DNA of 61,387 bases, the filler included, from Sluysia triapertura (taxonomy: Eukaryota): NCBI GenBank assembly GCA_046118255.1. It is 4 parts of 4 records of this genome, joined end to end, with 100 filler letters (N's around TTAATTAATTAA, not from the genome) between each part and the next. Parts side by side here need not be neighbours in the genome. Positions count along the whole stretch, not along the records: positions 19,089 to 31,390 come from JBJNIA010121860.1; 3 more parts are not named here. One strand, given 5' to 3'. Position 1 is the first letter of the stretch. Each line of letters starts with the position of its first letter. Position numbers and translations under genes: made by a program. This document shows, in pieces, positions 13,950 through 45,357 of this stretch. The notes beneath the pieces are model-generated. The model searched no databases and was not told the origin of the DNA. It saw only the letters and a list, made by a program, of their open reading frames with translations.

Positions 13950-15378
13950 AACGTGATATGTTACCATCGTTATCAATTTCATCTGCACGATCATCAGTAG
14001 TCACTGTATAATTGACTCCAATTTACCTTAACCAGTTTTTGATAATGTTATTAAATGTTTAACTTCATATTTTGTAAGATTCAGTGCTTTACAAATATAT
14101 TGTAGCATATCTAGTAGACCTAAATATCTACCTTTGTAAATGTCAAAAATACGTTCAACCAAATGGTATTCATTATTGTGCATCCAAAGTGAGCAATATT
14201 TCTTTTTGAACATTTCTACATCATGCATTTGAACAATATTTATATTATCTTCAAATTGATTTACAACTTCACTGATTACACGATCCCTATCTAATCGAAT
14301 CTTTGGCTGTTCAAATGAATTAACAATTTGATTTAAGCATACTGTAGGAATTGTGTTGAATATATTTATTCCACAACATATAATCGCGTAAAAATTTTGT
14401 CCCATTGAACTTATTTTCGGTACGATATCTGATATTTTTCCACGATCACTCCAGTATGCGTCATTAGGCCATTTTACACGCAATTGGCGCTTTATATTTG
14501 TTACTTTAATACTAACAGCCATAGTGTGCTGCAACAAAGACACATACTTCACTGATTTTGACTTCATGTTTATTTCAATCAATGTAAACATTTTACATCC
14601 AGGAGTAATCCATTTATTATTTTTATGACCTTGACCTTGAGTTTGGTATTTAGATATTATTTCCTAGATTAAGTAACTTTTCCATCATTACATAACTACT
14701 TTCCAATACGTCAGTATAGATAATAAGTATGAAAATATTCCTCTTCATTAAACATAGGTGTTGTTTCAAGAAATTCGTATTTATCTTTGATTCGTAACAT
14801 TACTTTTCTAGTTACTGTAATATGAACTGAGTTGTTCTTTGTAAGATTTTTTGCGTAAGTTTTTATTTGGAAACTTATATTTATTTTATTTATTGAAGTT
14901 TTTATTTATTGAACTATATAAATAAACAGAAGTAGGAAACTTTACATAATCTTCGACGACTAACTGCATGTATCTTTGTAAAATAAGTGTTCAATTACAA
15001 AGTTATCGATATTTCCAAAACGAAAAGCAACTGGATCTTATGTATTAGGATGTTTTTAAATAATCACATTATTTTCTGTTCATTCCAGTAAATTCAATGG
15101 GTTTGTTATTAAATATCCAATCAGTCACAACAACGATTTTATGTGAATGATTCTTTATCGTTTCTGTTATAATGTTTGTAAGTTCTTTTTATGTGCTTCA
15201 CCACTAAGAAAATTTCCAATGACAAAAATTTTACTATTATTAATCCAAGATCATTTAAGTACTTCATCCGCATTTAATGTATAAACGACGTAATGATGTT
15301 TCGAATAAATATTTTTAGTTAATTCAGGTAAATTAGAACAAAGAAAAGAAGTATATAGTATTATATCACATTTCTTCA
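13950..15378 (-). pseudogene. HLCS: Holocarboxylase synthetase / biotin-protein ligase pseudogene
   Basis: Contains YVVYTLNADEVLK*SW (premature TGA), QTQGQGHKNNKWITPGCKMFT (degenerate QTxGRGRxxNxWxSPxG motif) and VKWPND..KIS..CGINI. Multiple stops and frameshifts; no clear introns. Confidence 0.85.
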
Positions 15379-15899
15379 TTGTATTTATCAAATTAACATG
15401 TAAATAATCGATTAATTTTTTGTTATTTTATATTTTTAAGGTATTTATTGAAAATAGACATAAATGTGGCTATGTTTTAGTTACTTCAGCAGCTTTATTC
15501 ATTAAGTTTATGATGTATTATCGTACTTATAAAGCGAAAGCTGGAGGATGAAGAGTATCGGAATTTTTCTCTTGATATTACAATGTCTAATATTACAATA
15601 CACTACTTTTACCGTGTTTGACATTTGTAAAACTAGCTAGTGTATTTTTTGATTAATATAAATAAATAAATAATAGAATAATAGTACCTGAAATTTAAAA
15701 GAAATTTGTGATTATTATATCTACAGATTGTCCTTGAAATTGATAGTTGTTAAAAGAATTTAATTTCAACGAATACTGATAACATATTTTAGTTTTCTCT
15801 GTAATATTTGGATGTTGAAATAATCACTTAAACCATAAATTTCAAGTGGTAGTAGCGTTGGGGTTGTTCGAAACATATAGGTCCATTTTTATTTTCTAT

Positions 15900-16380
15900 A
15901 GATTCTTTACATTTTATATATTACTAATTTTATCATTTTCTTCTGCTTGTTTAATCTGATTATTTTCAATTTCTTTAATTTTTGTTTTTAATAATTGAGC
16001 AATTTGTCGCTAATTATCTATTGTCTTTTCTATGTCGATTCTAAAATCAATTTCTTCCTGATAATTCTAAACTTGAATTTCTTAAATTATCAATAATTCC
16101 TTCCGATTCTTTTAACTTTTTTGTTTTTTTTTCAGCTATTTCTCTTTCAATATAACTTTTTCATTTATTAATTTTTTCAGCTTCTAATTTTAATTTCATA
16201 TGTAAAACTTTAATTTGCGTGTTGAGTCTTCATTGTTATCAGTTTTACACGAATTAGTATTTTTGTATTCTTCCGGATTAATTAAGTTTAATTCAAAATC
16301 TTTCGTTGGTGTTTTAGTTGGATCCGTTTTCCGAATTCCATTCGATCATCATTAATTTCAAATTGACTAAGTATAGAATT
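15900..16380 (-). pseudogene. Decayed E/K-rich coiled-coil coding fragment
   Basis: Minus-strand translation gives K/E/I-rich segments (e.g. IAQLLKTKIKEIENNQIKQAEEND) broken by stops and frameshifts. Confidence 0.35.
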
Positions 16381-17410
16381 AAATTGATCATAATCACACA
16401 TACATAACTATATACAAGTTCAGACATACAAAAACAAAAAAAATATGAAGAAATGTTGAAAGTAAAGATATTAATAATGATAACAATAACGTATTTATTG
16501 AATATTTTAAAATAATGGTGTTGTGAGGTTATTATACGATAATCACATTATATAACAATAATGATAACAATCATTATATATTTTAATACGAATGGATTTA
16601 TAATAACAATAACCATGGTTCGTGATAATTATGTACAATGATTAGGTTTTGTTTAATGCTCTGTCTATGTAAGAGATGTTTTCATGTGATGAAATGTTGA
16701 TATTGTGATATGATTTCCATACACCTTGTAATGCCATTTTAGTATAAACTGAATTATATGATAAGTACAATGATTTTATTATTTTTACATAAACCTGCCA
16801 TAAATTTACTCATAATTTTTTGATCCAACGTACCGATATTATTAAAACTCAAATATAAAAATTCAAGATAAAACTTTAATGGAAATTAATAAAGAATTAT
16901 TAATGGGCAGGCATAAATATTTTAAATTAATTAATGTAACCATTAAGTAACGTTAAGCGTTATCATTGAGCAGATTATGACTTAATTGTATTAATATACT
17001 TCGATAATGTTACACTAAGATTTTGTGAATATACGGGAGTTAATCGTTTATAACACCAATGTCACTTAGACAATTGTCAGTTAAATTAATTTTTGCTATT
17101 GTTTCATTATGTATGAAACATTTTGCTAATACTCTAATGTCACTTTCCCAAAGTCTATCTATCAGATAAAATGTAACAAATATATTTATTACATGGAAAC
17201 ACGTTATGCTTTTTAGTTTATTTTTATAAAATTTTTGACCAGTACTATCATTATCAGGTAAGTTGCTTTCACCAGTAAATGAGTGGATTAAAAATTCGCT
17301 ATTTGTTCCAGCGTATTAGTCGTCACATGACGCGACATAAAAATTAACAATACTATTAAGTGATATTATGGTAAGAGTAAAGCTGTCCATTATGCAATTT
17401 TCAATTTTTA

Positions 17411-17866
17411 TTATTTGCTAATCGAATTTGAAGTTGCTTGGAGATAGTTGCTTTTCTTCACAGTGCCGCTTGGATCTATTTTAGGAAGTAGTGGGCCGTG
17501 AATCTGATACTTAGGCCGACCAACTCCAACAAGTATTCCTTCTTCAATATCTCTATATGCTATTGTATCTGCTAAATGTATAACAAATTTCGCAACCTGT
17601 TTCATATAAATAATATATCCTCACTATAAGAATTGGTGATTTTGATATACCGAGCAACTTGCAATAGATGCTCACTCGATAAACATACTTGATAAATCCC
17701 ATAAAGCAGGGTCAGCTAATCCAGTATCTCATTACCAGCTTATTTTGTATATCTTCTTCGAAAGATATGTTTTAAGAAGTTCAAAGACACCCTCACACGA
17801 GATTTTATTGACTTGTCGTTTTTGATGTCTCGTTTTTCTTTGATTATTTTCTAAATAATCTGGTAT
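17411..17866 (-). pseudogene. PSMC2: 26S proteasome ATPase Rpt1 (regulatory subunit 7) 5' fragment, pseudogene
   Basis: IPDYLENNQRKT (ATA in place of the MPDYL start), DTGLADPALWDL, LQVARYIKI and [45 protein letters not shown] match the Rpt1 N-terminus. Deletions and frameshifts; no recognisable AAA core. Confidence 0.9.
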
Positions 17867-18988
17867 TTTATTTAATCAGAAAATATGTGTATCAAATATT
17901 TGTCAGAAATATACTTTTAATTATTAACTTTAAAAAAACGTTGAAGAAAAATAATGATGTAAAGAAAAATAGCTAACTTAATGTTAAGAAGTTTTGTTTC
18001 AATTAAATTTTTAGATAAATGTCAAAAAAACAATTAAAATTAAATAAAATTAATTTTATTTTTAATAAATTAGAATATTTTTCGTCCCCCACACACAAGT
18101 CTTAGTAAATCTGTGGTTAGAATCAATCTTTTAATATTTACATTACGAATTACAAACCGATCATCTTCAAATTGCATTGCCATTTAAAACAACTAACTGT
18201 AAAATCGATTTCTTTCATTTTACATTTTTATAACTTTGTTGCAAATATTTTAATGACCTTTATACATCATCAATAGGGATCAGTATACCTTCCTAAAATG
18301 TCAACCTAAAATGAGTCATTTTTAATCTATATATTATTATTATTATTGATACTTCTAAAAAAATTAAAAAATGAATAAAACTAAACTTTAACAATTGAAA
18401 GATAATGAAAAAGTAATAAATTAATTAATTAAATTATTTTTTTACAAAAACACCAATTTACTTAAACTAAAATTTACTCAAACAACTACAAAAATAAATA
18501 AACAACTTATCTAAATAATTGTTATTGTATCTGAAAATAAAAAATAAACTACGTTTTGAATGAAATATTATCTTGAAAATTAATAATAATTAAAACAAAC
18601 AATCGGCAATTGGTTAGAACTTTTTTTTATAAATGCACAATGCACTTTTACTTAGAAGAACTCATTCGAAAATTCGAACTGTCAATTAAACAATTCAGAT
18701 ACAATCGGTGTGGTTTTCTGAACTCTTAACATATGGTAAAATAAAATTAAGCAGGGTTCGCTTATAGTAAACGACCTATGACGTAGAGTGGGCGTTCCTG
18801 TAACTATGGAAATTTGGTTTGGCAATTATTGCTTTAAGCAGTATAATTACTGTAATGATTAGAGGTTTCTAATATCATAATAATATTTATTATGATAATA
18901 ATAAAATAATAATATTTATTAATAAAACGAGATGGCGCCTATGTGCCTTGTCTGAATAAATAAATTTTTTAAAAAATACTTAAGTAAA

Positions 18989-19088
18989 NNNNNNNNNNNN
19001 NNNNNNNNNNNNNNNNNNNNNNNNNNNNNNNNTTAATTAATTAANNNNNNNNNNNNNNNNNNNNNNNNNNNNNNNNNNNNNNNNNNNN
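18989..19088. other. Artificial contig linker (N44-TTAATTAATTAA-N44)
   Basis: 100-nt spacer with a six-frame stop cassette, identical at three positions. Confidence 0.98.
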
Positions 19089-22000
19089 ATAATAGGAATC
19101 TGTAATTGATATTTTGTTTAATTAATAAATTATTTGGTTTTTGCTTTTAATTTGATTTTCTTTTTGAAACATTTAATTTTAGAATAATTATTATTATTAG
19201 TAATTAAGAAAATTATTGATATTTGGTATAGAGAGTATATAAACAATTGATTTATTTTTGTAGTTAATTAAATTAATATCTATTTCAATTAAATAATATT
19301 TAGAAAGACAACTCAATATAATAGTAATTATAAGAAATTGTATTAATCAAATATTGTATAATTAATCCTTTTGTCTGAATTAAATTTTGATTATAATTTA
19401 TATTCATTCTTATTTTAATATGCTGATTTTTCTGGATTATAATGCTTTTAAATTTGATATCACATTATTCTCTCTGTTCTGCTCAACCTTTAATTTAAAT
19501 TAATTTTAATCTGGAATAATGTTACTAAATTTAATTTACAAGTTTTATTCAATCTCAATTTAACATAATTTTTGAGTTACGTTTTAAACTAATTTTACAT
19601 GGATTTTGTATTCTTAAAGTTTTATTTTTATTCTTTATAGAATCTCATTTTAAGATGATTATTTATTTAATTTCAATTTAAAACTGATCACTATTTCTTA
19701 TTAAATTTCGAATTTATATTAACTTTATTAAATCTCATTTTAAATTGATATAAAGCAGTATAATCTTAATGGTAATGATTTTAATTTAATTTTAAAATAA
19801 TTTTGTTTTGAATGAATTTAAATTAAATGGATCATGTATTTTAAAAATTTTAAAATTTAAAATAAGTGAAAATTTGAAATTTAAAATAAATAAAAACTTG
19901 AAAAGTGAATGAATATTATGTTACATTATACGTAATTAAGTTAACCCTTAACATATTTAAAGCAGAAAATCCCATTAGTAAATAACTTACGATTTTAATT
20001 TTTTATAATAATTATTAAAGATCCGAGGATGAAGGTCAGTGAAAAGACATTTAATCCAAATAATTAAATGCTAAACTGAACGAATCGGGATAACAAGTCG
20101 CCGATATATTTAAACTAAGAATTAAATGCGATGAAATTTTTTAATTTGAATTTTCAAAACTTTTCCTTCGTGTGTAAATTTTATATAATATAATTTCATG
20201 CCATTTATATTATTTTTTTAATGGAGGTAATTTTGTTTTTTAAATTATTATTATTAAATATTGTTAATTGTTACTATATTTTATCAATGCCCGCAATTAA
20301 ATAATAATTATAACAACAACAAAAACCTAAATTGATTTTATGTTATAACTTAATTTGAAATACGATTATTTGTACCACTTTAAAAAAATCGATTTTAGTT
20401 CTTTAGAAGTTTAAGTTACACTCAGATTTAGCATTAGTAAACTTTTGATTACTGCCGAATCCACTTTAATTATTTTTATAATCCTACTTGTGATTTTTCT
20501 GTAGACAATATATATTCCCATTATTGCGTTATTTATTACATTATAAACTAAGTTAATATTTCACATAGTCTTAAATAAATTGTTTTCGTGATTTTAACTT
20601 GAATTGAGACTAACTAATTTTGCACAATAATTCAATTTTGAAAACCCTCTCTGGTAAGCAATTCAAATTTGAGAGGTAAGGAATAAAAAAACTTATATGT
20701 AGACAAGAGTAAGAAAAATCTAGCATTATTATTATTAATTATTATTATAGCGTAACGGATATTGATAAATAAAAATTCAAAAAACTAAAGTTAAATTCAT
20801 TATTTTTCTATATGTTTAATAAGACTTTTATTGCAGGCGAACCCATCGATTATATTTATTCTTATCATAAGTTACTAGTATAACCGCACCATGATTATTT
20901 TATGATTATTTTTTTTTAATTACTGGGAATTTTATTTTAATTTTTATTAAATTGTGTTAGGGAATCAACCTCTATTTTAAAATACTTTTTAAAGCTGATT
21001 ATTTAATTTATTGTGTTTTATTTTTATACAATTGTAAAGCTATCGAGACGTAATTTTAAAAGTGGTCAGAGCATAAGTTAGATTCTTTTAGTGGTTTATC
21101 TTTACGAAAATTCTGTTTCGAAGGATAACGGAATTAATTAATCTATTTTACCAATTTCCATATAGGTTTTAATTATATAGATTTTTTATATCTTCTTTAA
21201 AGTCAATATGCGCCTCAACTTGTAAAGATTTTTTGCTATTTTAAAGCTAGCGTTAAAATCTAATTAAAATATAAATCAATACTAGGGATAATAATCTAAT
21301 ATTTTAAATTATATCATTGTGTAAATAGTAAAATGATCAACAGTACAATTTTCAGAACTACGATAACCTTAGTTTTAAAATATATATTCTCAAGCTTTCA
21401 ATCTTTCTAAAATCTTTCTGCATTAAATAGCTGAAATAAATTTAGATTTAATATATTTATACCTATTTATATCTCGATTTAGTAAATAAATTCCTATTTT
21501 AAACACTTATTACACAGCGATTTTGTGTACTTTTTAATTTAAGTATTTGCTTAAATTATTTCACGTAGCCAAATCTTACATGGCGTCATAAATTAACGTA
21601 AATCGTATCATTAAATAGAAAAATATAAAGTCAAATGATTTAAAACGACAAAGTTAAAACTTAAATTTCATTAAAATATTAACCTATTCGTTTCGATGTT
21701 TAAAGTGCGCAAAGTTTTATTAATGTATAAAAATAGTACATAATAAATTATAGTTAGATATCGATTTTTAAACAATTGTCAGTTATTGTAGATTTAAATT
21801 ATGGTTTCTGAATTTATCTAGTTTCAACTTAAATCCAATACGATTTTAATTATAAATATTTAAAATAATAAAAAAATTATTTAATATTTTGATTGTTTAT
21901 TATTAAATTTATTATTTGCAATAAAAATAACTTATTCGTTACTTTAATTTCACAACTATGTTAGTGATTCTAAAAGTTGTTATTGTTTGATGTAAATTAT

Positions 22001-22178
22001 CTTTAAAATATAATTATGTAATACTTAGATTTTACTATATTTAAATATGCACTAATTAAATAGATACAAAAATTAAAACGAGAAACCTTGAGTAGATTTT
22101 ATTTAATTTTCTTTTTAAAATCAACGCTTATGTTAGCTTTTATTTTTTGGCTTAGTCTTCTGAATAAAAATAATTATA

Positions 22179-22440
22179 GTGAGTTCACCAACGTACTATT
22201 CTTACCGGTAGGGCTAACCGCTGGGTTTTGAGAAAACTTAATACTTAAGGAGGTTAACTTGTTTCAACTAAAATTGAAATTAAGCCAATAGTTTTATTTG
22301 GATTTAATCATGGAAGATTTTAATATGGTTCTTAAAAATGAACCAGAAAATTTAAATTGGAATTTTAATTAGTTTCAAAAAATAAATGTAGTTTTAATTG
22401 TCAATAAGATTTTAATCAGGTTCTAAAATGAACCTCTACG
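22179..22440. repeat. Dispersed repeat, copy 2 of 6175-6450
   Basis: Shares GTGAGTTCACCAACG, TAGGGCTA.CCGCTG, GGAGGTTA..TTTCAACTAAAA and GGTTCT..AAATGAACC. Confidence 0.75.
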
Positions 22441-23814
22441 TAAACTCAAATTTTTAATAACAAAATAACAATAATGAAATACTAAGTTAATATGGAATTA
22501 CATTGAAAAAAATGAAGTCACACAAATTTATGTTTAATAAAGAATATTTTAATTAGCTAATTTAGTAAATAGTAACTCCAATAATTCAAAAGGATTTTAA
22601 GTAAAAGTTTAGAAGATGCAATATTAAAAATTTCGAACGATTCCTAATCAATTAAACTAACGATAAAGGATACAAATTTTGATTGTAGTAAGATAATTCT
22701 GGAACGTGGATTGCTGTCCAAAGAAAAAATCGTAGGAATGAAGTTCTGAAACGCGGATTAGTCTTTAAGAAATTGGAATTGTTTTTTAATTGAGTTTTTA
22801 ATTGTGAAAGTTTTTGAAGTGTGAAAGTTGTAGTGTAATGGTCTATCTTAAATATCAGAAAAGCGTCCTTGAAGGTCAATAGTTATTTTAAACAACAAAA
22901 AAGATAATTATTTTAAACAAAGTAAATAAAAATAAAAACGATTTTGAATTCTTGTATTACCAAAATTTAAAACATTTTACTTCTTTTAAAAATGATTTTA
23001 GAATATTTTATAAATATTTTACTTACTTATAAAATTTGAATTTAAATTTCCGTATAAAATCTATTATTAAATTTATAAAAATCAATAAATGCAAGTTAAT
23101 ACTAATAGTGTGTACAAAAATTAACATCAAGTATTATCATTAATCATCATAACAAATCGATATTCTAAATTAATCATCATATTAACAAAATGATCGATAT
23201 TCTAAATATAGAATATTAACACTTATAATATAACGAATATTCGGAAATAGTTCAAATTATCAGCAAAGATTTCTGGAAGTAATAGTTCAATATTAATCGA
23301 TGTGTTCAATTTTGTAATTATTCAAACGATCCCAAATCAATTAAATGAATAATTTCAAATAATCTCAAGAACGTAATAACAATTAAAAGTCTGTATTTAA
23401 ATCTTTCCTGTGAATTGACTGTCGATAAAATTTTAAAAAAATTCGTAAACAACTTGTAGAAATAATGTTATGTTTAATACTTGTCACTACATTTATAGTA
23501 ATAAAATATATATGGTCACTGACCTCAATCTAATCACTAATCTACCAATGTAGTTAAGTGCCTTGAATGTAAATAATGAAATATAACTTTATAATATTAG
23601 TAATAATAGTAATAATAATACTTTTCTAATAATGTAATAATAATTTCAAATAATGTAATAATTTTAATAGCTAATAATAATAAAAGTATTAATAATAATA
23701 TAATAATAATAACTATTTATTTTAAATTCTATCTAAAATTATTTAATATTTCCTTATGCATTTACTAAAACATACATTTAAAAATGCAAAAAAAATTAAA
23801 TTACTTTTACACTA

Positions 23815-24560
23815 GCATACTTAAACAGACCGAATGGATTGGTCACTGCTGTTTTGCGTATATCAGCAGTATGTAATAGAATTTGATGATATGCCTTCGC
23901 CGGGTCTCTTGTACAGCCAAAAAATGTAGACAGTATATCTGTGGTGAGTGGCATGGTTATGCCTCTGGAATTGTAACTTTGCTTAAAATTCTGGTTCCAT
24001 CTTTCTTTATGATGATCTGGATAGGTGTGGCCTATGAAAAAGAACTTCGCTCAATTACTTGCTTTTTTTAAGATCAAGTTACCGTCGTCATTGTCTGCAT
24101 CGTAATGTTGGTATTGTTTTGATGAAGTATTCTTATTTGGATTAAATTGGTCACGTGTTAAATTCGGGTAAACTTGTTTCACATAGATGTAACGTTCGAT
24201 TGATTTATCTGCTCTAATTGAATTTTTATGTGAGCAAGTTTTCGGATGCCTTACTTAATGTTTTATTGTTACAGTTAAGTATGAGCTTGTAATATGTTAG
24301 AAAGTCTGCTTCCATTATTGGCCGCTGTACTGCAGCAATTAAGGATGTCCATTCAAATGTTTGATTGAATTGAGTAAGTTTAAAGCGTAGTTTTCTGGAG
24401 TCGCAGCAGGCAGCACTGATGCCATTTGCAGCTGCTAGAAAAGAACGTGCGTTTTTTATAACTCTTATGGAATCACAAACACAACAGCTCCAATGTCAAT
24501 CAGAAAATCCAATTTATTATATTCGAAACCTAATATCTTTAATGAATAGGTTATATAGTT
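23815..24560 (-). mobile_element. Ty3/gypsy pol remnant (aspartic protease plus N-terminal reverse transcriptase)
   Basis: Protease: FLIDIGAVVFVIP, LAAANG..FEWTSLIAAVQRPIMEADFL. RT: VIERSSFS*ATPIQIIIKKDG and DPAKAYHQILLHTADIRKTAVTNPFGLFKY. Stops and frameshifts throughout. Confidence 0.9.
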
Positions 24561-24577
24561 AACAGAGGTCTTTTTAA

Positions 24578-24810
24578 CGTTAGGCTGTCATCACGAACCT
24601 TTAAAATTATCAAATCGATAGACATAAACAATATTAATTTCTAAAACTTATTTTCCAAAAATGAAGATTTGTTGCTAAAAATAGGAAAGAAGTTTCTAGA
24701 ATGTTCTAGAACATTCCATCGATTCCTACTGGCTGATGACTAGTACACAAATTAGCATCAATTTTGTTAAAATCATCATTTAAGATTCGGCCATGTTAGA
24801 TTTCACTTTA
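24578..24810 (+). mobile_element. HSE-bearing LTR-like repeat, copy A (partial)
   Basis: (C)GTTAGG start, TTCTAGAATGTTCTAGAACATTC at 24694-24716, CGGCCATGTT at 24788. Confidence 0.7.
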
Positions 24811-25367
24811 TTTGTTCGATTATTATTATTATTATTGGATTTGTTTAGATAATTTTAGTAGAGTTCAATTACAATTGTTCCATTGATTTAGTAAGTTAAA
24901 TATATATTTAAATATAACTTCACGATTGAAATTATTAAATCGTGATAAATTCTTTTCAGTAATTTTTAAATACTTCGATCTAATGAGGGGAAAATTATAA
25001 AATAAAATCTGTCAGAAAAAAGAATAAATATCTCTTACGATTTTAACCCTAAAATATTAATTTGTAAATTTTCTTCTTTTCTTGTTATATTATTTGATTT
25101 TATTGTTAGTATTTGCTAATAAATTCTTAAATTGTTTTTTACATTGTTTCTGAATTGATTTTTGATTAAAATTAAAGTTAGAAGTGCATAATAATATAAA
25201 ATTTAATTAATTCATAAAGTTAAAAATCATTCGAGAAACAACGAACTGGAATCACTACAATTATAAAACAAATCATTAAACATAAGGTACTCAAAAATAC
25301 AGAAAGTTTAATTAAAGAATTTTCAGTCATTCTATATTAAATTTTACTTTAAGTTGTGCTTAGATAT

Positions 25368-25743
25368 AGTTTGAGGAACGCCATCTTTACAACATAAACC
25401 GTTTATTTTAATTTCTATTTTGATATAGGTTAAGTGTTAAAAATCCCAGTAGTAATTTATAAACGTTAGAATCCTGATCCTTTTCAATTAATTTACAATC
25501 AATTGTTTCACAAATCAACGAGTTAACTAACTTTTACAATAAGATTTTAAAATTAAAACTTGTTAGATATTTAATATGAACTTGATATTAAAATAACTTT
25601 TCCCATCAGTAAAACTGGGTGTAAAAATAAAGAAAAAGTTTTAAAGTGAAGAAAAACCATCTTAATATTGAAAAATTTAATCATTCGTTTTTATAAGTGA
25701 AATAATTTCAAGGTACGCAATAATAATAATAATAATAATAATA

Positions 25744-25789
<46 letters not shown>

Positions 25790-26046
25790 TAATATTAATA
25801 ATATTAAAAATAAGTGAACTAAACTACAAATCAAATTGTAATTCAAAAATTGTAAAATGAAATTGTGAATTGATTTTCAATGGAAACTAGTGTTTGGACT
25901 AGTCAATGACCAATCACAATCAATTAAAATTCTAGAATTTTCTAGAAAGTTATTTTCTTTTTTAGAAAATCGTATTTTACGTTTTGGAAAATATTTTTCT
26001 TTTTCAAAAATTTATGATTTTAAACAGCTGTGACGGCAATCTAACA
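25368..26046 (-). mobile_element. HSE-bearing LTR-like repeat, copy B
   Basis: TGTTAG start at 26046 (minus strand), TTCTAGAATTTTCTAGAA at 25930-25947, CCAAT at 25910, family 3' segment near 25370-25445. Interrupted by a microsatellite. Confidence 0.7.
25719..25787. repeat. Self-complementary (AAT)n(ATT)n microsatellite
   Basis: About 9 AAT units switch directly into about 14 ATT units. Confidence 0.9.
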
Positions 26047-26150
26047 AGATAAATGTTTGTCCATGTTTAAATTTACTTAAGGATCTTAGTAAGGTGGCTT
26101 ATTTTATTAATTAAAGATTTTATTTTCATTATTTAAATTTTTATGAGTTA

Positions 26151-26407
26151 TGTTAGGTTATCATTACAACCCTAAAATCATGCCATTTCTATTAAAGCCA
26201 TTTTCTAAAAAGAGTCCGAATTTTTAGAAATTTTAGAGAATTTCCATTGATATTGATTGGAATCAGAAACATTTAAAATCTCAATTTAATACACAATTTG
26301 ACAATACAGCTCTAGTTTTTCTAACACTTAACCTAAGGCAAAGTAATTTTTAGCATGGTCCGGTTGCAGTAAACAACTCACAACGTGCAATGGGCGTTTC
26401 TGTAACT
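26151..26407 (+). mobile_element. HSE-family LTR-like repeat, copy C (internally deleted, HSE degenerate)
   Basis: Starts TGTTAGG and ends GGGCGTTTCTGTAAC. The 3' block is shared with 30543-30630 (minus) and 18730-18805. Confidence 0.65.
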
Positions 26408-28829
26408 TTAAGTTAATAATTATCAACGTACAATTTGTTTTCAACCCTGAAAAATGAATGCTTAAAAGTCTAATTAGTTTACTGAATTCTTTACTTAAAT
26501 ATAATAATGAAACGATAAATCCAAAACACTTTTATTAAGAAATTACAAAATTTAAGTTTACAAATTGTGTGTAGAATAAAATTATAGACATCAAGTAAAT
26601 AAAGTAAGACAAATTAAGTTTTTCAATTAAAACGGTTAGGGCCTTTAACTGTTTTTTTTAGTAAAATAAATTTAAGTATATTTTACCCCTGAATATATCG
26701 GAAAACTTAATATATGTGGAAGACTTAATACTTTTAAAGATTTTACCTACACAGTGAAATTTTATCTTTTTTGAAAGTTTAAAACATTAAATTTAAGAAA
26801 AAATTTGTTATTCTTTTTTATAATTACGAACAAATAAATTATGCTTAAGGTCTTTAACCAAACAAACAAAATTTAATCTAAACAATATAACAAAATTAAC
26901 AAGTAATCATATGTTGAACAAAGAAATAAAAATATCAAATACGTAGATGTAAAAGTTATACTGGCAAAACTAAATCTGGAATTCGTTTTATTGAATTGAC
27001 ACAAAATAAATATTCAAATTCTAATAAACATAATTAGCATAATCATTACTTTCATACGATTCATTGTTATATAAAACATTTTAAATGACTTCAGGTTGCT
27101 CAAATTTTCATAAATAAATGTGATATTTGCTTTTATTATGATTGTTCAAGAAACTTTCACGGAAATATAAACCCAAATAGATATTGTTCGTTAATGAATA
27201 ATCAGCGATCCGCTTATTTTCAGTACAAAGGTTATAATGATCAACAAATTAAATGAAGAGATGAATAAAATAAGTAAAAATATTCATGTCATTAATTATT
27301 TTATTATACATAACAACGATTGATAAAATCTTTATTTCTACTGACTGTTACTATTAATCACAAATTTTTATCATAAGAATTATCGATTATTTTATAATTT
27401 TAAATTACAATTTAAAAGCTAAATAATCACAAATAATTACATAAATAATCATCAAATCATGAACTCCGTAACATTTCTTTCTCTTTCTAACTTTAGTTCT
27501 TTCTAATTATATCATTTTAATCATCATCACTGTTGCTTTTGATTCGATAAAATTTTTTCAGTAATTTAATTATTAAATATATTTGACTGATTATTTATCC
27601 ACATTAAATGCATGTGACCACGTTTATTATTTAATTTAATTTGTGCTATTTATATTATTTAATTATATTTAATTGTATCTTAAATATTTAATATTTGATC
27701 AGTTTTATTTTTGTAAAAAAGTATTTAAATATTGTTATAATAAAATAAATATTATTTTAAACAAAAAAAATTATCATTAATATTACGAAGTGAATATCAT
27801 TATTAATTTGTTTTAATATATCAATTCTCCAATAAAAATCAAGATGGAGATTATCAATATAAATATGAGTTATTTTCAAACAACATGGCAGAACATAAAA
27901 AGGATTTTTCGAAGATTCAATTATACTCTCAAACTCACAGTTACATGCAAAAATAATTATTTATTCAATAAGTTTATAAAATACCTTAATTTTAACATAA
28001 TAGGGTCTCTAAAATATTACTTAAAATCTATTTAATTGTCCTAGACCGTAACTGGCTAGGTTAAAATTTTGATATACCTAAGCAGTAAGCTTAAGGTATT
28101 AAAATAATTATAATTATTATATCTTTGTCATTTGTAAAATTTTGAATATTTTGTTTTTGATAGTCTGTAAATAATATATTTCAGTTATAGCCACTTTCTT
28201 TAAAAATTAAAATACTTTGACTGTTTAATCAGCCCGTACAAAGGCTGACTTAAACTATAAAATATTAATTATATTGAAAGACCATAATAAGGCTGTCTTA
28301 ATCTCTGTTAAGTAAAACCACGATCTTTTTGTAAGTATAAGTATAAGTTGTATAAATAAAATACTTGTAATTGTATCATCTTGCAGTATATTAAATTGTT
28401 CTTTCATATCATCTATATCACTTTTCATATCATCATCATCATTATCAGGTGAATCTAAAATATCAGTCACTTTCGTCTTTAATTTGATTATCTATTCTAA
28501 TTGGAATTGACATGATGTTCGAATTGTTTGCTATTGATTAATTAGATATGTTTGAAAGGCAAGATATATTATCTAGTTCAATATTATCACGATTAATATC
28601 ATGATAATTTTCTTCTTTTATTATTTAATTATCGAATATAACCGTATCTATTGATCTATTTACTTGGTCAGGCGAACATTTATAAATAACATTTATTTGA
28701 TAAGGAACTAGTTGGTCGAGATACTGTTGATTTAGAACTGGAATCTTCTGGTAAATACGTGATGAATTTTCTAATGTGTTCAATAATTCTGACGGTTTTG
28801 AAATTATATAACCTTAAAAATGATTTATC

Positions 28830-29156
28830 TTAACAATTTTGAAGAATATAATGAAACATGTAAAAGTAGAAGTAAAAACAGAGATAACAGTGAAAAACAT
28901 GAGAAACGATTAAAATATATGGATAAAGATAAACACGGATGTAGGAAAAGGGCAACAAACAAAACATTGTAGTAGTTATTACTATTATGATACCAGTTAT
29001 TATAATAATAACAACAAATTATTGCGAGGTGTTTATATTTGGTATGTATTGAGTACATTATTGCTGTGTTGCAGTTTGTTTATTAATTTGTGACACGTGT
29101 TGCTTTGTGATGACATTTGATTATGACTGTGACGAGTTCATTTAGAGTCCACTACA
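28830..29156 (-). mobile_element. CA-rich TGTAGTGG LTR-like element
   Basis: Minus strand begins TGTAGTGGACTCTAAATGAACTCGTCAC, resembling the copies at 6830, 36987 and 45110. Confidence 0.5.
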
Positions 29157-29380
29157 AAATATTTTCAAAAATGAATTTAAGTTGATAAATTAGTACCTAC
29201 CTAAGAAAAATAACTAGCCCAAAACATGGAACCGTCCGCAGATATTGAATAATAATTGTCCTTTTTGATCCAGCGCAGTAGAAACCAAAATTGTAAGAAA
29301 AATTAATTGAATGGAATAACTATAAAAAACAAGATTGGTGAATGTAAAATGACGGCTATGATTTTAATGATGCTACTTTA

Positions 29381-29700
29381 TGTCATCACACCTTCTAAAA
29401 TCATATGAAATGCTCTAAATTTATTTATGTATCTTTAAAATCACCTTTAAAATATTTATTTTCCAAAAAAGAAATTTATTTCTAAAAAAGAAATTTCCCT
29501 TACTAAAAATGGGAAATACGTTTATAGAATATTCTAGAATTCTATTCGCCTATGACTGGCTGTGGATTTGTGTAAATATCCACAGCTAATCATAAAGAAA
29601 ACATTAGTCAATTTACAATTCAATTTTCTCTGGCATCTTGTAATTTTATGTATTACGATCAATTCGCTTTGTTCGGCCATTTTTGGAATTCAGAGTTTTT
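29381..29700 (+). mobile_element. HSE-bearing LTR-like repeat, copy D (partial)
   Basis: GTCATCAC..CTAAAATCAT, GAATATTCTAGAATTC at 29527-29542, CGGCCATTTT at 29674. Confidence 0.65.
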
Positions 29701-30542
29701 GGTCAATCAAATCGGTATATTAGAAATTCATTCCAGTTTCTTCTAATATTAGTTTTCTTCTAATACTAGTTTTTCCATAAAATCTTTTTATTTTATGGGA
29801 ATTTTGATTTAATAATCGGAATTTTAAAATAGATTTAAAATCTCAATCTTATTATTTTGTTTTTGGCTAATAAAAATTAGTAAATTTAATTTATGTAAAT
29901 CTCACTTAAATTCATTTTTTAATTTTTCAATTTTAAAAATCCGCAATATAAGAATTAAAGGCCCAAAAAGGTTTTGATTTTACAATATCTTATTTATTTT
30001 TCTTATAATCTATTTTGTGCCTTTGTTATAAAATTGTAAATTTCGAAAGTTTACTAGTTTTTAATTGTGAAGAAGACCAGTTGAAAAATTACAATAATTT
30101 CATTATGTAAAATAAAGATTAACATTTTTATTTTTCGAGTTATATTTGTATTTTTTATAAACATTTATATATTTTCTATTTATTTTTATGAAACTGATAA
30201 TTTTCAAGGAAAAAAATTATAAATAAATTTAAAATAATAAGTAATACTAAATACTATAAATATTTTAAAAAATTAAACATTGTAAATATTTTAGAATTAA
30301 TTAAATAAATCAGTTTAAGCATTGTAAATATTTTGGAGAATAAATTAAATTAGAATTAATAAATTAAATAACTTTAGAAAATGAAATCATTAAAATTTTA
30401 TTATTATTATTATTTTATACTTGAAAATGATTACACTTTAATTTCACATTAAATTTAATATTTTATCGCAAAAAGTATTAAAATTTGATCCTCGTATATT
30501 TAGATTATAAGTTTAAGTTACTACGTTTGTCTTCACTCATAT

Positions 30543-31296
30543 TGTTACAGAAGTGTCCACTTTACGATGTAAGACGCTTACTGTAACCGGACCCTGCTCA
30601 ATTTTCTATTTTGCCGTAGGTTTAGACTTAAGAATCAGCAAAAACCACAGCAGGTGCAATAGTTTTTTCAATACTCTATTTTATAGTTAAAACTATATTA
30701 AGTCTTTAACTTATTTAATTGTATTTTACAGTGTATTTTGCCCCTCAATATATCGGGGAAACCTTAAAATTTACTAACTGAAATATTAGTTTAAGTAGAA
30801 TTTAAGATATCAGCTTCCTTAAATAAAGTTAATATCAGTCTTAAAATAAACAAATTACTTTGATCATGGATATAAAATTGAATATTGTTCGATGTCTCCA
30901 AATCCAAAATTCTATTTGTGTTTGTCGAATAATTTTCCAATAATGATTATACGTCAAAATTCAATATGGCGATGATTGCAACTGCCTAATTTGAAACTAA
31001 TGCTATTAAAAATGGCGATTTTCATTGTATTGATCTTAGTTTATAAACCAGTCATCATCCAATAAAAATTGTTGCAGTGTTCTAGAATATTCTAGAGCAT
31101 TCTAAAAGCTTCTATTCTATTTTTAGAAGCTAATTTTCTTTTTCAGAAATTTTACTTTCTTTTTTGGAAAATAATTTTAAAGATTAATAAATGGTTTGAA
31201 ACATTTTCTATGATTTTATTTAATTCTTTAATAATGTTAAATAGTTTTAAATAATTTTAAGGTGTCATTATTTTATAAGGTTGTGTGAAAACCTAA

Positions 31297-31298
<2 letters not shown>
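30543..31298 (-). mobile_element. HSE-bearing LTR-like repeat, copy E (apparently complete ~756-bp solo LTR)
   Basis: Termini TGTTA...TAACA (TG..CA short inverted ends), TTCTAGAATATTCTAGAGCATTC at 31080-31102, CCAAT at 31059, AAAATGGCG near 31009. No clear TSD. Confidence 0.7.
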
Positions 31299-31353
<55 letters not shown>

Positions 31354-31390
31354 CCTCCTCCTCTTTTCCTCACTTCCTTCCACCACTTCC

Positions 31391-39135: not shown

Positions 39136-41687
39136 TGTGATTGAAGTTGCGTAGTTTATTAAATGAGTAAACTTATCTTTATGTTTTGTTGTTTGCAGAG
39201 ACTTTTCCTATCTTGTCTTATAACTTAAAAAAAATTATCCAATTTTATTTTAATAAATTTTTATGGTTACAGCATACAGTAAGTTTAATTTTGAGAAATA
39301 AAATATTTTACTTTTAAAATAATAAATTTTGTTTTGCATTTATTTTAATGTTTTATATACTTTACACTTTCAAAATTACTTACATAAAATTTCAAAATTT
39401 AAACGTGCATAAACCATATTTTTTCAGATTCTAAGCACGTCCTGTTTTTTTTACCGAAAATAAATTTCATTTAACCCTTTGCTGTCAAGCCTAAAATGTA
39501 TGAAATTATTCGCTTTACAATTTCTGTTTTGAGTGTTATTGTATATCTAAGTTTTATTATTTCAAGATAAATACATATATTTTGACAATCATTTACTTGT
39601 ATAAAAATCAAACATGCAACAGGATTCGATATCCTTTTTCCTTATTCTTTTGCTTATAAGCAAATCACAAATAGATGAAAGTGTAGAAATACTAAAAACG
39701 GGATTGAATTTTATGTAAATTTGCAAAGGCTGGTTATTTACTTTGACGATTATTTAGATTCTATTTCTTCTCAGAGATAAAAGGATCATGTAATATTGAC
39801 TCCAATTGGTTTTATCTGCAACATCTCTCATCAGTAAGCAGTGTAGCTTCGTATAGTCAGAAGTGCCCATCAATAAATTATTAATAAACAAATAAATAAA
39901 GTAGAATTTTTGTAAAAATTTATTTGTAACTTTCAAGTTTTAAAAATATATATAAAAAATCATAAATATATATATATTTATGTTTATGGCCATAAAAGGT
40001 TTGCAAGCTCCACAAGTTGTACATTATAATACATTAAAGTATCACGAGTATATTCGTGCTGCAATGCATAACATCCTGCCAACCACGAGCATATTCATGG
40101 TTGGCAGTGAACTGTTTAAAGATATTTTTAATTATCAATATTCTAAAAAAATAAGTTTTTGTGATTTGGCTTCTTTGGGGAATTTTGTTACAATTAGGAC
40201 TTTTTTCAAATTCGACTAGCTCCTGTAATTTTTCATTAAAATAAAATTTGATTGTTAAATTTAAAACCCGGTTAAATCGTAACGAAAACATGTATATATA
40301 TTTTCCTAGTTTATACAAGTTAATCTAGACTATTTAGTATATATAAATTATTATTTGGGTTCGCCTGTAATCGACGCTTTATATCCTGTCTTTTGGTAAA
40401 CACAGTTACAGGATCTTATTTTATTCTAGCTTAGGTAGTTCTGAGGGTCTCTATTTGTCTTTAAGCTTTTAATATGAATTTAATGGTCTCTATTTTCTTT
40501 CAATCTTATCAAAGTACCACTTATACGTAATCAAGTTACTTATAACTTTAATATTAAAAAAATGTGAAGCTATACTGTAAAAAACGAATAAATAAAAAGT
40601 AAACATAATTCGATATAATTAATTATATTTTACAATAAATATGAACACTTCAGATAAAAAAATTCTCCAATAATCAACGAGAAACAGTTATGAACTTGAT
40701 TTGAAATGAAACGAAAATGATCAAAAAAAGTTAGTCCACAATTATTGAATTGATTTAAGTGAAACACGTAATCGGAAATAATAGCCAAATGTTATTTTCG
40801 TAATGACTTAAATATTTCATAATTTTTTAAATATTTAGTTAATAAAATCTCATTCAAAAGAATTTACTAATTCATGAGTGTAAAAATTGCAATAGGTTTT
40901 TTATAATGCAAGATCTCATCTTTTGTTAGTGGTTTCAATAACTGCGAAAAATTAAACAGGAAATGATGTTGATTCACAATCAACTGATTTATCGAATTTA
41001 GTATTAACTTAAATTGGATAATGGTTTGTGCTAATTCATAATAAGAATCATTATTAGGTTTTATGTAATCGTAATTAAACCTAGTGTCGAAGTCATCATT
41101 AATTAACATTACTACATTAATTAATTAACATCAACCACTGAATTATAATCACACTCAATACTTAATTACTTAATACTTTTTTTCATAATATGCAAAATAA
41201 TAATAATAATGAAGCATTATCAGAATAAATAAAAAAATTTAAGTAATTTTTTGTATTATGTATTTGTATTTTGATTGGATTTATTTGGAAACCATTGAAA
41301 ATAATTAATAAAACTTTTAATATTAAATCCGGAAATTTTGTACAAAAATTTAATATCAAATAAATGATAATATTGGGTGGTCGGAAAATAAAGTGACTGA
41401 AAGAATGTTGCAGCTTGAAGGTAAATAGATCTATATTTTATAAAGTTTTATAAAAACTTTATAAATATATAAATTAATTTAATTAAAATTGTTTGAAGAA
41501 CATTTTTAATCAATAACTTTCTTTATAATGTTTGCATAGGAGTGAATGTCACAGTAAAACACAATCATGAAATATATCAATATTATTGTTGGTATTGTCC
41601 AACTGCGGATTAGGAGATGAGTAAGAGATATGAAGGAAGAGTTGATACGAAATGATAGATTGAAATTATAAACATTATGGAGAAAAA

Positions 41688-41870
41688 AATCATGAAAATG
41701 AAAGTATCTTTAATGATGTTAACAGCTATAGAATACCTTGGCATTCCAAAGACCTATAGAAGATGTCGAGACCTTGTGGAAACTTGAAAAGCACTTGGAA
41801 AACCTTTGAAGGCATTTAAGCTTGTTAATCTTGAGATCATCTAAGACATTATTAACCTTTAAGTATTCTT
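41688..41870 (+). repeat. Repeat block B (also at 53069-53258)
   Basis: Shared AATCATGAAA..GAATACCTTG..CCAAAGACCTATA..GAGACCTTGTG..CTTGGAAAACCTTTGA..ATTAACCTTTAAGTATT. Confidence 0.85.
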
Positions 41871-42504
41871 GAAAACTTCATAGACATTTTGGATCTTCGA
41901 GTAACCTTATAGAGTATTTAAAATCTTTAAAATAGTTGAGAAATAAAATCATTGTCAATAGTATTAAGAATAAATCTAGTATAGTAATAATTACATGAAG
42001 AGGTAGAAAAAAGGAATCATAGAGGTGAAGGTGAAAACATATAGAGCCTCCTGAATGCCTTATAACCTACTAAATAGCTTTAGAACCTTAATAAAACCTT
42101 GAAACATAAGATAGGATTAAGTATAAAAATAGATTAATTAATTACAAATCTTTATTAAGAAAAAGTACGCTTTTGTGAATAACTTTTAAATGCGGAATCC
42201 TACATTAAATTTGAAACTATGCATGTATTTTTTTACAAAGACCTTGCGATGAAGTTAGGGTTTGACCAAATTCATACAAAGAAAGCCTTAATATTGAGCA
42301 AAGTTAATATGAAATGTTGAATTTTTCATACTTAGAATGATGCTAATAAAATGAATTAAATATGAGATGATTGCTATGAAACAAGAGAACTAAAGTGCAT
42401 TCGATATGTTTATAGAATTGTTGCGTCTTTAAATATTATTAGTTATGATAATTCAATATAATCTTGATTATCTTAAAAGAATCTTAATAATTTAAGTAGT
42501 CACT

Positions 42505-42790
42505 ATATCAAGTATAATTTTGCAGTAATTCTCTTACTTAATATTAATAACTATTCCCCAAAAATTAAACTCTTAAAAATCAAATCAAAAAATAAGACAA
42601 TAATTTACTATTAAACAAAAATCAAATTACAATTTATTGTTATTAGTATGACTCTCCACTAAACAATAGTAAAAATAACTAAAATGACAAAATTAACAAT
42701 AGTGTTTATTATAATATTAAGAACACTACAATCTAACTAAAAAAACCAGGAGTTACGCAACAAACACTAACATTATCAACATTTAGAAAG
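42505..42790 (+). repeat. Repeat block A (also at 52509-52795)
   Basis: High-similarity ~290-bp match beginning TATATCAAGTATAATTTTGCAGTAAT. Confidence 0.9.
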
Positions 42791-43261
42791 TTAATAATTA
42801 TGCTACTTAAATATTTTTAGTTAACGTAACCGAGAGTAATCACCATTATAACAAAAATTTTTGGACAGAGATACTTTTAAAAACTTAACAGTAATATCTA
42901 AAGTATAAATATTTAATGTTTCGATAAAATAAAATGTGTAGGATGTTCTCCACAAAACTGCTTTAAAATGGCTGAAAATAAAATCAAACTATTTATAATA
43001 AAAGTAGCACAATAAAAACTTATATTAAAATTATCTTCCCTTTAATAACATCAAAAATAAAAGTAAAATAAAATCAATTAATTACCTTATTTTAATTTTA
43101 AAATAATAAAATATCAAAAATAAAAAATAAACAAGAAAATTACCCAATTCATGGATATTCACTGGATAATGGCATAATTGTGTCATTGTGTTATTGTTTG
43201 TTAAAAATTTAGAAATCTTTATTTTATACTCTCTCATCATCCAATCAATTCCCAGTCTCAC

Positions 43262-43600
43262 TGTAGGGAAATCTCATAAAATTCATAACACTTCATCACA
43301 TAAAACGATTTCACATATACACAGATAATTAAACAAACTACTAAACTCATTCAAAAAACAAACATAATCATTGCACATTATTATCACGAACTACACCTAT
43401 TATTATTACAATTCATATCTTATTAAACAATATATAATAATTATTTTCATTACTGTTATATAATATGATTATCAAATAATAACTTTTATAATAAATTTCA
43501 CAATAAAATTTCGTATCAGCATCAACAATGCCAGTATTAATAAACATAATAACCACGTTATTATTATCATTATTATTTTTCTTATCCTTAATATCAATCT
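43262..43600 (+). mobile_element. TGTAGGGAA LTR-like repeat, copy 2
   Basis: Aligns with the 36987 copy. Confidence 0.7.
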
Positions 43601-43685
43601 TTCTTTTTCCATTTCATCTATAAAGTTTACATTTAGTATCTGTTATAAAATTTGATCTTTCAACAACTCCAAAATTTCAATTGAA

Positions 43686-45257: not shown

Positions 45258-45357
45258 NNNNNNNNNNNNNNNNNNNNNNNNNNNNNNNNNNNNNNNNNNN
45301 NTTAATTAATTAANNNNNNNNNNNNNNNNNNNNNNNNNNNNNNNNNNNNNNNNNNNN
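45258..45357. other. Artificial contig linker
   Basis: N-TTAATTAATTAA-N, 100 nt. Confidence 0.98.

What the first reader, a model, noticed from the sequence alone, without database searches (positions are those of the whole stretch)
24578..31298. LTR-like family carrying heat-shock elements plus CCAAT and YY1-like motifs
Seen: five related copies in 6.7 kb. Three have alternating nTTCn/nGAAn arrays (24694 TTCTAGAATGTTCTAGAACATTC with five units; 25930; 31080), one has a three-unit array (29527) and one is degenerate. In copies B, C and E a CCAAT/ATTGG lies ~15-20 nt away, and copies A, D and E have GCCATnTT further on. These motifs look better conserved than surrounding sequence. Known: three or more alternating nGAAn units bind HSF1, and stress-activated or HSE-dispersing transposons are described (ONSEN in Arabidopsis, Helitrons in Caenorhabditis). 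Inference: a stress-inducible retroelement promoter seeding HSF sites.
Basis: partly seen in the sequence, partly recalled or inferred. Interest (0 to 1): 0.72.

Follow-up and report, generated by a model that had tools for sequence, protein, structure and literature searches.

The report
High-copy repeat carrying heat-shock elements
Five decayed copies of a very abundant, non-coding mobile-element family sit here, and the family's shared core is a near-ideal binding array for the heat-shock transcription factor next to a CCAAT box. It probably scatters heat-responsive switches through this genome, but it is not shown to be an LTR, and neither binding nor heat induction has been tested.

Summary
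Five related copies lie at 24577-31297: A+, B-, C+, D+, E-. Four carry perfect arrays of alternating nTTCn/nGAAn units (6, 4, 3 and 3 units); 0.17 such loci are expected by chance, and none of 1000 shuffles reached four. Contigs of the one public run that holds this DNA show the family is hugely repeated. Summed depth at the array is 80,000-265,000 against about 13 for single-copy parts. Most other copies read the two letters that complete E's damaged units, so the family's common form has 6-7 contiguous perfect units followed by a perfect CCAAT box. The HSE array is therefore an ancestral, best-kept part of the element, not a local accident.

B, C and E share a second high-copy block 40-450 nt downstream. 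The LTR reading is not supported: there is no direct pair and no pair closer to each other than to the rest, and a primer-binding-like TGG occurs in one copy only. The element class is unresolved. Non-autonomous, with conserved end blocks, internal tandem repeats and an (ATT)n tract, it looks most like a Helitron/Helentron-type or other DNA element.

HSF binding and heat induction are inferred from sequence only, because no RNA run was available. It is a new member of a known kind (TE-borne HSEs).

The parts
24577..24842 (+). Copy A, 5' block. It holds the terminus CGTTAGG..GTCATCAC, ~20-nt subrepeats at 24640-24687, a six-unit perfect HSE array at 24688-24717, ACTGGCTGATGACTAG at 24728-24743 (a mutated CCAAT site), GCCATGTT at 24790 and (ATT)6 at 24818-24838. 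A weak downstream extension may reach ~25075.
   Evidence: downstream A-E z=4.9 against controls up to 3.3
25366..26049 (-). Copy B. The core is 25875-26049, with a four-unit HSE at 25929-25948 and CCAAT at 25910-25914. An expanded (AAT)n(ATT)n tract lies at 25719-25790. A weak match to the downstream block Q lies at 25366-25451.
26152..26412 (+). Copy C, degenerate and shortened. It holds the terminus TGTTAGGTT, a decayed array around 26215-26245, ATTGG at 26256-26260, and a well-kept downstream block Q at 26308-26412.
   Evidence: 26327-26406 matches 30625-30544; E 4e-9; z=27
29371..29700 (+). Copy D. It holds the terminus TGCTAC..GTCATCAC, subrepeats at 29446-29520, a three-unit HSE at 29526-29540, GACTGG at 29554, a palindrome at 29548-29597 and GCCATTTT at 29676. 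No downstream homology to the other copies was detected.
30538..31297 (-). Copy E, the longest unit. The terminus TGTTAGGTT lies at 31297 and the subrepeats at 31116-31185. The HSE array is 31079-31113: three perfect units plus units broken at 31097 and 31105. CCAAT is at 31059-31063, a TATA-like TTTATAAA at ~31040, CGCCATnTT at 31009-31017 and 30963-30971, and the downstream block Q at 30538-30652.
26627..26713 (-). Possible fragment of a sixth, minus-oriented copy. It matches E at 30687-30770.
   Evidence: blastn E 7e-5; nhmmer E 0.08; weak
23799..24495 (-). Decayed protease/reverse-transcriptase remnant of an unrelated, older retroelement that abuts copy A. It has one in-frame stop at 24051-24053 and a frame change around 24229-24254.
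   Evidence: stop-free stretches; no Pfam hit on the pieces; Atlas features point to RVT_1, score 0.93, 29 of 30 hits; no second copy in the piece

Best explanation
The five copies are decayed insertions of a very abundant, non-coding (non-autonomous) transposable-element family. The common form of its 5' block is laid out like a heat-shock promoter or enhancer. In order, it holds three ~20-nt subrepeats, then a 10-bp-periodic TTCTAGAAnn array giving 6-7 contiguous inverted nGAAn units. About 10 nt further on comes a CCAAT box, then a TATA-like stretch, then one or two CGCCATnTT motifs. A second conserved block (Q) lies 40-450 nt downstream, across a variable middle that includes an expandable (ATT)n tract. 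That layout fits an element with conserved ends and a variable interior better than it fits an LTR. Shown here: the relatedness of the copies, the abundance of the family, and that the array is ancestral and the most widely kept part. Inferred: under stress, HSF trimers bind the array cooperatively and NF-Y binds the CCAAT box. Young copies would then act as heat-inducible promoters reading into the element, or as enhancers for nearby genes, while old copies such as C, D and E decay roughly neutrally.
For: Copies are related and arrays are far above chance. In the one public run, single-copy contigs have depth 10-16. Summed depth is 120,222 over 30991-31190 and 265,005 at 31105, and 11,366 contigs were laid on the 6 kb. 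At 31097 and 31105, 97% of that depth reads the letter that completes a TTCTAGAA unit. Contigs that leave E before 31085 share a sequence holding a perfect CCAAT that abuts the array, and its layout matches copy A. The HSE window is the best-conserved window among the local copies, and its core triplets are changed less often than the next 30 nt (p=0.03). Block Q is shared by C and E (z=27) and more weakly by B, always downstream and in the same orientation, and is itself high-copy (depth 120,390 at 30605). Part of the array is identical to the idealised HSE oligonucleotide used as an HSF gel-shift probe in many papers. Three or more inverted nGAAn units are the established HSF site. TE-borne HSEs that bind HSF-1 and drive heat induction are documented for Caenorhabditis Helitrons (PMC6927752).
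Against: No binding or expression data exist; no RNA run holds the locus. The local excess conservation of the array is weak: four copies, an alignment anchored on the array, p=0.03. It is compatible with near-neutral decay. A 10-bp palindromic tandem repeat can grow by slippage without any role for HSF. The CCAAT-to-TATA-like spacing (~13 nt) is tighter than in typical promoters, and the CGCCATnTT motifs point the opposite way to the YY1 sites at LINE-1 and ribosomal-protein gene starts (my own knowledge). Summed contig depth is not a true copy number (the tool's own warning). Element ends and class are not defined.
Confidence: 0.55

Rival explanations
1. One reading: the copies are (solo) LTRs of a heat-activated LTR retrotransposon, with the HSE array in U3, as in ONSEN.
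For: Four of five copies start with TG (TGTTAGG). In copy C, block Q reads ..CA|TGGTCCGGTTGCAG, which resembles an LTR end followed by a primer-binding site. A reverse-transcriptase remnant lies 80 nt from copy A. The order HSE, CCAAT, TATA-like is the order expected of a U3 region.
Against: No direct pair exists, and no pair is closer to each other than to the rest (all about 70-80% identical). The direct neighbours C and D are not significantly alike. The TGG is absent in E (GGG) and in B. Distance from terminus to Q is 215, about 650 and about 700 nt, with a low-copy middle (depth 344-2,111) between two high-copy blocks, which is unlike a uniform LTR. The RT remnant is on the opposite strand to copy A and has no relative next to the other copies. 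No gag/pol remnant follows Q in C or E.
Confidence: 0.18
2. The array is structural, not regulatory. It is one of the internal tandem or palindromic repeats typical of non-autonomous DNA elements (Helentron/HINE, foldback, tandem-repeat MITEs). It grew by slippage or serves as a transposase/Rep recognition repeat, and its likeness to an HSE is incidental.
For: The array is strictly 10-bp periodic, and unit number varies between copies (3 to 7) in steps that fit gain or loss of 10 bp. It adjoins three ~20-nt subrepeats and lies near an expandable (ATT)n tract. HINE and DINE-1 elements are described as carrying central tandem repeats and microsatellites (PMC4067079). Local decay is close to neutral.
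Against: The repeat matches the HSF site at every core position over 6-7 units and is followed at a fixed short distance by a CCAAT box, a pairing typical of heat-shock promoters (my own knowledge). The adjoining 20-nt subrepeats do not keep HSE phasing, so slippage alone does not explain why only the perfect-HSE repeat is the most abundant block. Even an incidental array of this quality would be expected to bind HSF.
Confidence: 0.22
3. The copies are arms of long-inverted-repeat (foldback-like or DIRS-like) elements: A with B, C with a decayed partner, and D with E. The HSE lies in each terminal inverted repeat, as in Dictyostelium DIRS-1.
For: Orientations alternate (A+ B- C+ [weak F-] D+ E-). 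The outer ends of the A/B and D/E pairs are both the TGTTAGG-type terminus, 1.47 and 1.93 kb apart. 10- and 20-bp tandem repeats inside the arms recall Drosophila FB inverted repeats (my own knowledge).
Against: Strict alternation of five copies has a chance probability of 1/16. Arm similarity stops after about 190 nt. D has no downstream homology to E (z=-1.2). Block Q is present on only one side of each pair. No target duplications are visible at the outer ends.
Confidence: 0.12

Closest known systems
HSE-carrying Helitrons of Caenorhabditis (Garrigues et al. 2019, PMC6927752)
   Same: A non-autonomous, high-copy DNA repeat that carries overlapping tandem HSEs and scatters them through the genome. 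The arrays are repetitive in nature.
   Different: The Helitron end marks (5' TC, 3' CTRR) are not seen at the candidate ends here. There is no sequence similarity. This family adds a CCAAT box and GCCATnTT motifs. That survey saw dense HSE clusters only in Caenorhabditis among the genomes it examined. HSF-1 binding and heat induction were shown there and are untested here.
ONSEN/ATCOPIA78 LTRs of Arabidopsis (e.g. PMC13602373)
   Same: A mobile element whose own control region holds HSEs, so heat activates it and new insertions can confer heat response.
   Different: ONSEN is a low-copy autonomous Ty1/copia element with paired direct LTRs. Here there are thousands of non-coding copies and no LTR pairing, and the array is far longer and more regular.
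DIRS-1 of Dictyostelium discoideum (heat-shock promoter in its inverted terminal repeats; from my own knowledge, Zuker et al. 1984)
   Same: HSEs near the ends of an element whose terminal repeats are inverted. The neighbouring copies here face each other in two pairs.
   Different: DIRS-1 is a 4.8-kb coding element with a tyrosine recombinase. No such coding region, and no arm homology beyond about 190 nt, is present here.
Helentron-associated INEs / DINE-1-like elements (Thomas et al. 2014, PMC4067079)
   Same: They are non-coding and very high-copy, with conserved end blocks, central tandem repeats and a variable microsatellite. Both have a short palindrome close to one end; here it is AGGTT..AACCT, 4 nt from the TGTTAGG terminus in E and C.
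   Different: The 12-15-bp subterminal inverted repeats were not found; only a 7-nt GTCATCA/TGATGAC pair is present. T-rich target sites and true ends could not be established from five decayed copies.
Human satellite III / nuclear stress bodies (review PMC9032817)
   Same: Massively repeated non-coding DNA that offers HSF1 very many sites.
   Different: SatIII is a pericentromeric tandem satellite with degenerate GGAAT repeats. This is a dispersed element with canonical arrays.

Membership tests
Heat-shock element (HSF binding site) | Three or more contiguous inverted nGAAn pentamers in correct 5-bp phase | tested here: met
   A has 6 perfect units, B 4, D 3 and E 3. The majority of genomic copies have 6-7.
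Heat-shock element (HSF binding site) | Occupied by HSF and conferring heat induction | not testable with these tools
   No RNA run holds the locus, and no ChIP data are available.
LTR of an LTR retrotransposon | Two direct copies flanking an internal region, more alike to each other than to other copies | tested here: not met
   Orientations are + - + + -. All pairs are about 70-80% identical. The direct neighbours C and D are not significantly similar.
LTR of an LTR retrotransposon | TG..CA termini with a PBS (TGG..) next to the 3' end of the 5' LTR | tested here: inconclusive
   A TG start is seen in 4 of 5 copies. CA|TGG is seen in C only; E has CA|GGG and B has neither. The host tRNAs are unknown.
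LTR of an LTR retrotransposon | gag/pol of the same element inside | tested here: not met
   The only RT remnant (23799-24495, minus strand) is antisense to copy A and has no counterpart near B-E.
Canonical Helitron | 5' TC and 3' CTRR ends, a 16-20-nt palindrome about 11 nt from the 3' end, insertion between A and T | tested here: not met
   The candidate ends read TGTTAGG and ..CTGTAAC. Only 4-5-bp palindromes are present. The flanking A (4 of 5) and T (3 of 4) are not informative at 78% A+T.
Helentron-associated INE (DINE-1-like) | 12-15-bp subterminal inverted repeats, a short palindrome near the 3' end, central repeats or a microsatellite, T-rich target | tested here: inconclusive
   Central tandem repeats and a variable (ATT)n tract are present, and a short terminal palindrome is present in E and C. 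No 12-15-bp subTIR was found. The ends are not defined.
Foldback / long-TIR DNA element | Two long inverted arms belonging to one insertion, with target duplications | tested here: inconclusive
   There are two facing pairs, but arm homology is only about 190 nt, D and E lack downstream homology, and no duplications are visible.

The most novel reading that the evidence does not exclude
A single non-autonomous element family has planted on the order of thousands of near-ideal 6-7-unit HSE arrays, each with a CCAAT box, across this AT-rich genome. Its young copies are bound by HSF on heat shock. The family would then be heat-activated itself and would also rewire, or buffer as an HSF sink, the host's heat-shock response. 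That would be a much larger, independent counterpart of the Caenorhabditis Helitron case.
Probability: 0.3. Interest if true: 0.7.

Novelty: new member of a known kind. Interest (0 to 1): 0.52.

Why it matters
Transposable elements that carry ready-made transcription-factor sites are a main route by which stress networks are rewired. For HSF, the well-documented animal case is the Caenorhabditis Helitrons, and that survey saw dense HSE clusters nowhere else among the genomes it examined (PMC6927752). A second, independent family would be informative. This one has a longer and more regular array, a fixed CCAAT partner, and apparently thousands of copies. It would allow a direct test of whether such dispersal is adaptive, whether it is a strategy of the element (mobilising under stress), or whether it merely titrates HSF. 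If the arrays prove inert, the finding is an ordinary decayed repeat cluster.

Tried and rejected
- There are no tRNA genes and no ORF over 77 aa in the piece.
- An Rfam scan at E up to 1 gave only a sub-threshold mir-383 hit on D's palindrome, and no hammerhead or SINE-type RNA.
- Pfam found nothing on the RT/PR pieces or on other stop-free stretches.
- Two metagenome scans with family-specific patterns found nothing. A viral-contig scan gave three chance matches that are alike only at the pattern letters.
- A full-text search for the family's motif strings found only papers using the synthetic HSE probe.
- A conserved hairpin downstream (E 30745-30770 and its counterparts) was considered, but folding does not support it (z -0.7 to +0.9 in four copies). 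Only D's different palindrome folds well.
- A 16-mer dot plot between the A/B and D/E units was swamped by AT-rich noise.
- Host heat-shock gene promoters were rejected as a reading: no coding sequence follows any copy, and the block is present in thousands of copies.
- The large protein search was not used to fish for spurious ORFs of other copies, because of its cost and low odds.
- I did not try to extend the piece or name the organism; the run's organism is coded.
Full report
**Setting**

The piece (19089-31390) is about 22% G+C throughout. It has no ORF longer than 77 aa, no tRNA gene and no Rfam family above threshold. It reads as non-coding, repeat-rich DNA of an AT-rich eukaryote. The single public run that holds it is coded, and I did not try to name the organism.

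**The observation**

A scan for alternating nGAAn/nTTCn pentamers gave these perfect arrays:
- six units at 24688-24717 (copy A);
- four at 25929-25948 (B);
- three at 29526-29540 (D);
- three at 31079-31093 (E), followed by further units one letter off.

There are none anywhere else in the 12.3 kb. In 1000 dinucleotide-preserving shuffles, the mean number of loci with three or more perfect units was 0.17. No shuffle reached four loci, and none contained a four-unit array.

The copies are related:
- Self-blastn gives 69-90% identity over 30-140 nt, with E down to 3e-15.
- nhmmer links A, B, D and E over about 130-190 nt, with E from 3.5e-12 to 3e-4.
- C is degenerate in this part.

Orientation is A+, B-, C+, D+, E-.

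CCAAT lies 15-17 nt from the array in B and E and beside the decayed array in C. A and D read ACTGG at the same place. GCCATnTT occurs seven times in the piece against about 0.8 expected from base composition. Four of these are at matching places in A, D and E (twice).

**The family in the rest of the genome**

I laid the contigs of the one available run on 25391-31390 at 80% likeness. Stretches between the copies are covered by single contigs of depth 10-16. In contrast, 11,366 contigs pile on the repeats.

| Place | Summed depth |
|---|---|
| 30991-31190 (bin mean) | 120,222 |
| 31105 | 265,005 |
| 31097 | 81,523 |
| 31144 | 83,847 |
| CCAAT side (31035-31064) | about 40,000-46,000 |
| Outer 5' part (31226-31236) | 10,000-19,000 |
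| Interior (30811-30915) | 344-2,111 |

The tool warns that summed depth is not a copy number. Divided by the single-copy depth, it suggests thousands of copies of the core.

Two further results matter:
- At 31097 and 31105, 97% of the depth reads the other letter, and both changes complete a TTCTAGAA unit. The usual form of the family therefore has six to seven contiguous perfect units, and E is a decayed copy of it.
- Contigs that leave E just before 31085 share a sequence holding a perfect CCAAT about 10 nt from the array. Its layout is the one seen in copy A.

The array with its CCAAT box is thus an ancestral feature of the element and its most widely kept block.

**Anatomy**

Read from the TGTTAGG end, each unit has these parts in order:
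1. a terminus (TGTTAGG..GTCATCAC);
2. 60-110 nt of unique sequence;
3. three ~20-nt subrepeats of the type TTTTCYAAAAAAGAAA;
4. the 10-bp-periodic array;
5. CATCGAT..ATTGGCTGATGACTAG, which holds the inverted CCAAT;
6. a TATA-like stretch, clearest in E and D;
7. one or two CGCCATnTT motifs;
8. an (ATT)n tract of very different length in A, B and E.

A second block, Q, lies downstream in the same orientation in C (26308-26412), E (30652-30538) and, weakly, B (25451-25366). It reads ..AACCTAMGGCAAA..GGTCCGGTTRCAGTAA..TTCTGTAAC. The support is C-E z=27, B-C 5.3 and B-E 4.4, against controls up to 3.3. Q is itself high-copy (depth 120,390 at 30605).

The distance between the two blocks is about 40 nt in C and 350-450 nt in B and E, and the stretch between them in E is low-copy. 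Two conserved blocks around a variable middle is the pattern of non-autonomous elements that share ends with a partner. It is not the pattern of a uniform LTR. D shows no downstream homology.

**Is it an LTR?**

Points in favour:
- a TG start in four of five copies;
- CA|TGG at the start of Q in copy C;
- a retroelement remnant next to copy A.

Points against:
- No direct pair exists, and no pair is closer to each other than to the rest.
- The TGG is not shared by E or B.
- The block structure is not that of an LTR.
- No coding remnant follows Q.

The remnant at 23799-24495 (minus strand) looks like protease plus reverse transcriptase. It has motifs of the ..AYHQI.. and ..KTA..PFGL type, and an Atlas feature match to RVT_1 at 0.93, but no Pfam hit on the pieces. 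It is broken by one stop and one frame change, is antisense to copy A, and has no relative near the other copies. I take it for an older, unrelated insertion.

**Other classes considered**

- Canonical Helitron end marks (hallmarks as listed in PMC4067079) are absent.
- The Helentron/DINE-1-like pattern described in the same paper is partly met. Tandem repeats, a variable microsatellite and a short palindrome 4 nt from the TGTTAGG end in E and C are present. No 12-15-bp subterminal inverted repeat was found.
- The facing pairs A/B and D/E recall foldback or DIRS-type elements. However, arm homology stops after about 190 nt, and five alternating orientations have a chance probability of 1/16.

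The class stays open. My ranking is a DNA element of the Helitron/Helentron or a similar non-autonomous kind first, then an LTR derivative, then a foldback-like element.

**How it most likely works**

It is established that three or more inverted nGAAn units bind HSF trimers, and that longer arrays bind them cooperatively. Part of this array is letter-for-letter the idealised probe used in HSF gel shifts. The order HSE, CCAAT, TATA-like is that of many heat-shock promoters (my own knowledge).

I therefore infer that intact copies bind HSF, with NF-Y at the CCAAT box. They would act as heat-inducible promoters reading into the element, or as enhancers on neighbours. This is what was shown for the HSE-bearing Helitrons of Caenorhabditis (PMC6927752).

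This step is inferred, not shown. No RNA run holds the locus.

Selection after insertion is at best weakly indicated. The HSE window is first of 209 windows (0.79 against 0.55 identity), and core triplets are changed at 9 of 75 positions against 31 of 120 in the next 30 nt (p=0.03). However, there are only four copies, the alignment is anchored on the array, and C, D and E are visibly decaying. A serious rival is that the array is a slippage-prone structural repeat whose HSE character is incidental.

**Novelty**

TE-borne HSEs are known from ONSEN, Caenorhabditis Helitrons and DIRS-1. No paper in the library holds this family's motif strings. Metagenome and viral scans found no relatives. I rate it a new member of a known kind. 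It is of moderate interest because of the quality of the array, the fixed CCAAT partner and the apparent copy number. It stays unproven until binding or induction is tested.

Noticed in passing
window 23799-24495 (-): Decayed protease plus reverse-transcriptase remnant of an LTR-type retroelement. It has one in-frame stop (24051-24053) and one frame change (~24229-24254), and ends about 80 nt from copy A.
   Followed up: partly
window 24818-24838, 25719-25790, 30940-30955, 31298-31353: An (ATT)n/(AAT)n tract sits at the same relative place inside copies A, B and E, with very different lengths: 6 units, about 24 units, and 3 degenerate units. Another long (ATT)n tract abuts E's terminus. The family may seed or target this microsatellite.
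   Followed up: partly
window 29548-29597 and 29775-29800: Two clean palindromes occur in or after copy D: GCTGTGGAT..ATCCACAGC, and a 10-12-bp stem CCATAAAAT..ATTTTATGG (DNA fold z=-3.3). The first caused a sub-threshold mir-383 hit in Rfam.
   Followed up: partly
window 27991-28390, 25791-25990, 28791-28990: Other stretches between the copies also show raised summed depth (490-1,650 against about 13 for single copy). The whole region is therefore a patchwork of further, unexamined repeats. One contig also skips 27532-28375.
   Followed up: no
window 31297-31270, 26152-26180: A short palindrome, AGGTT(7-8 nt)AACCT, starts 4 nt from the TGTTAGG terminus in E and C and is imperfect in A. It may be an end hairpin of the rolling-circle type. 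The stems are too short to judge.
   Followed up: no
window 31354-31390: The piece ends in a CCT/CTT-rich low-complexity run right after the (ATT)n tract.
   Followed up: no
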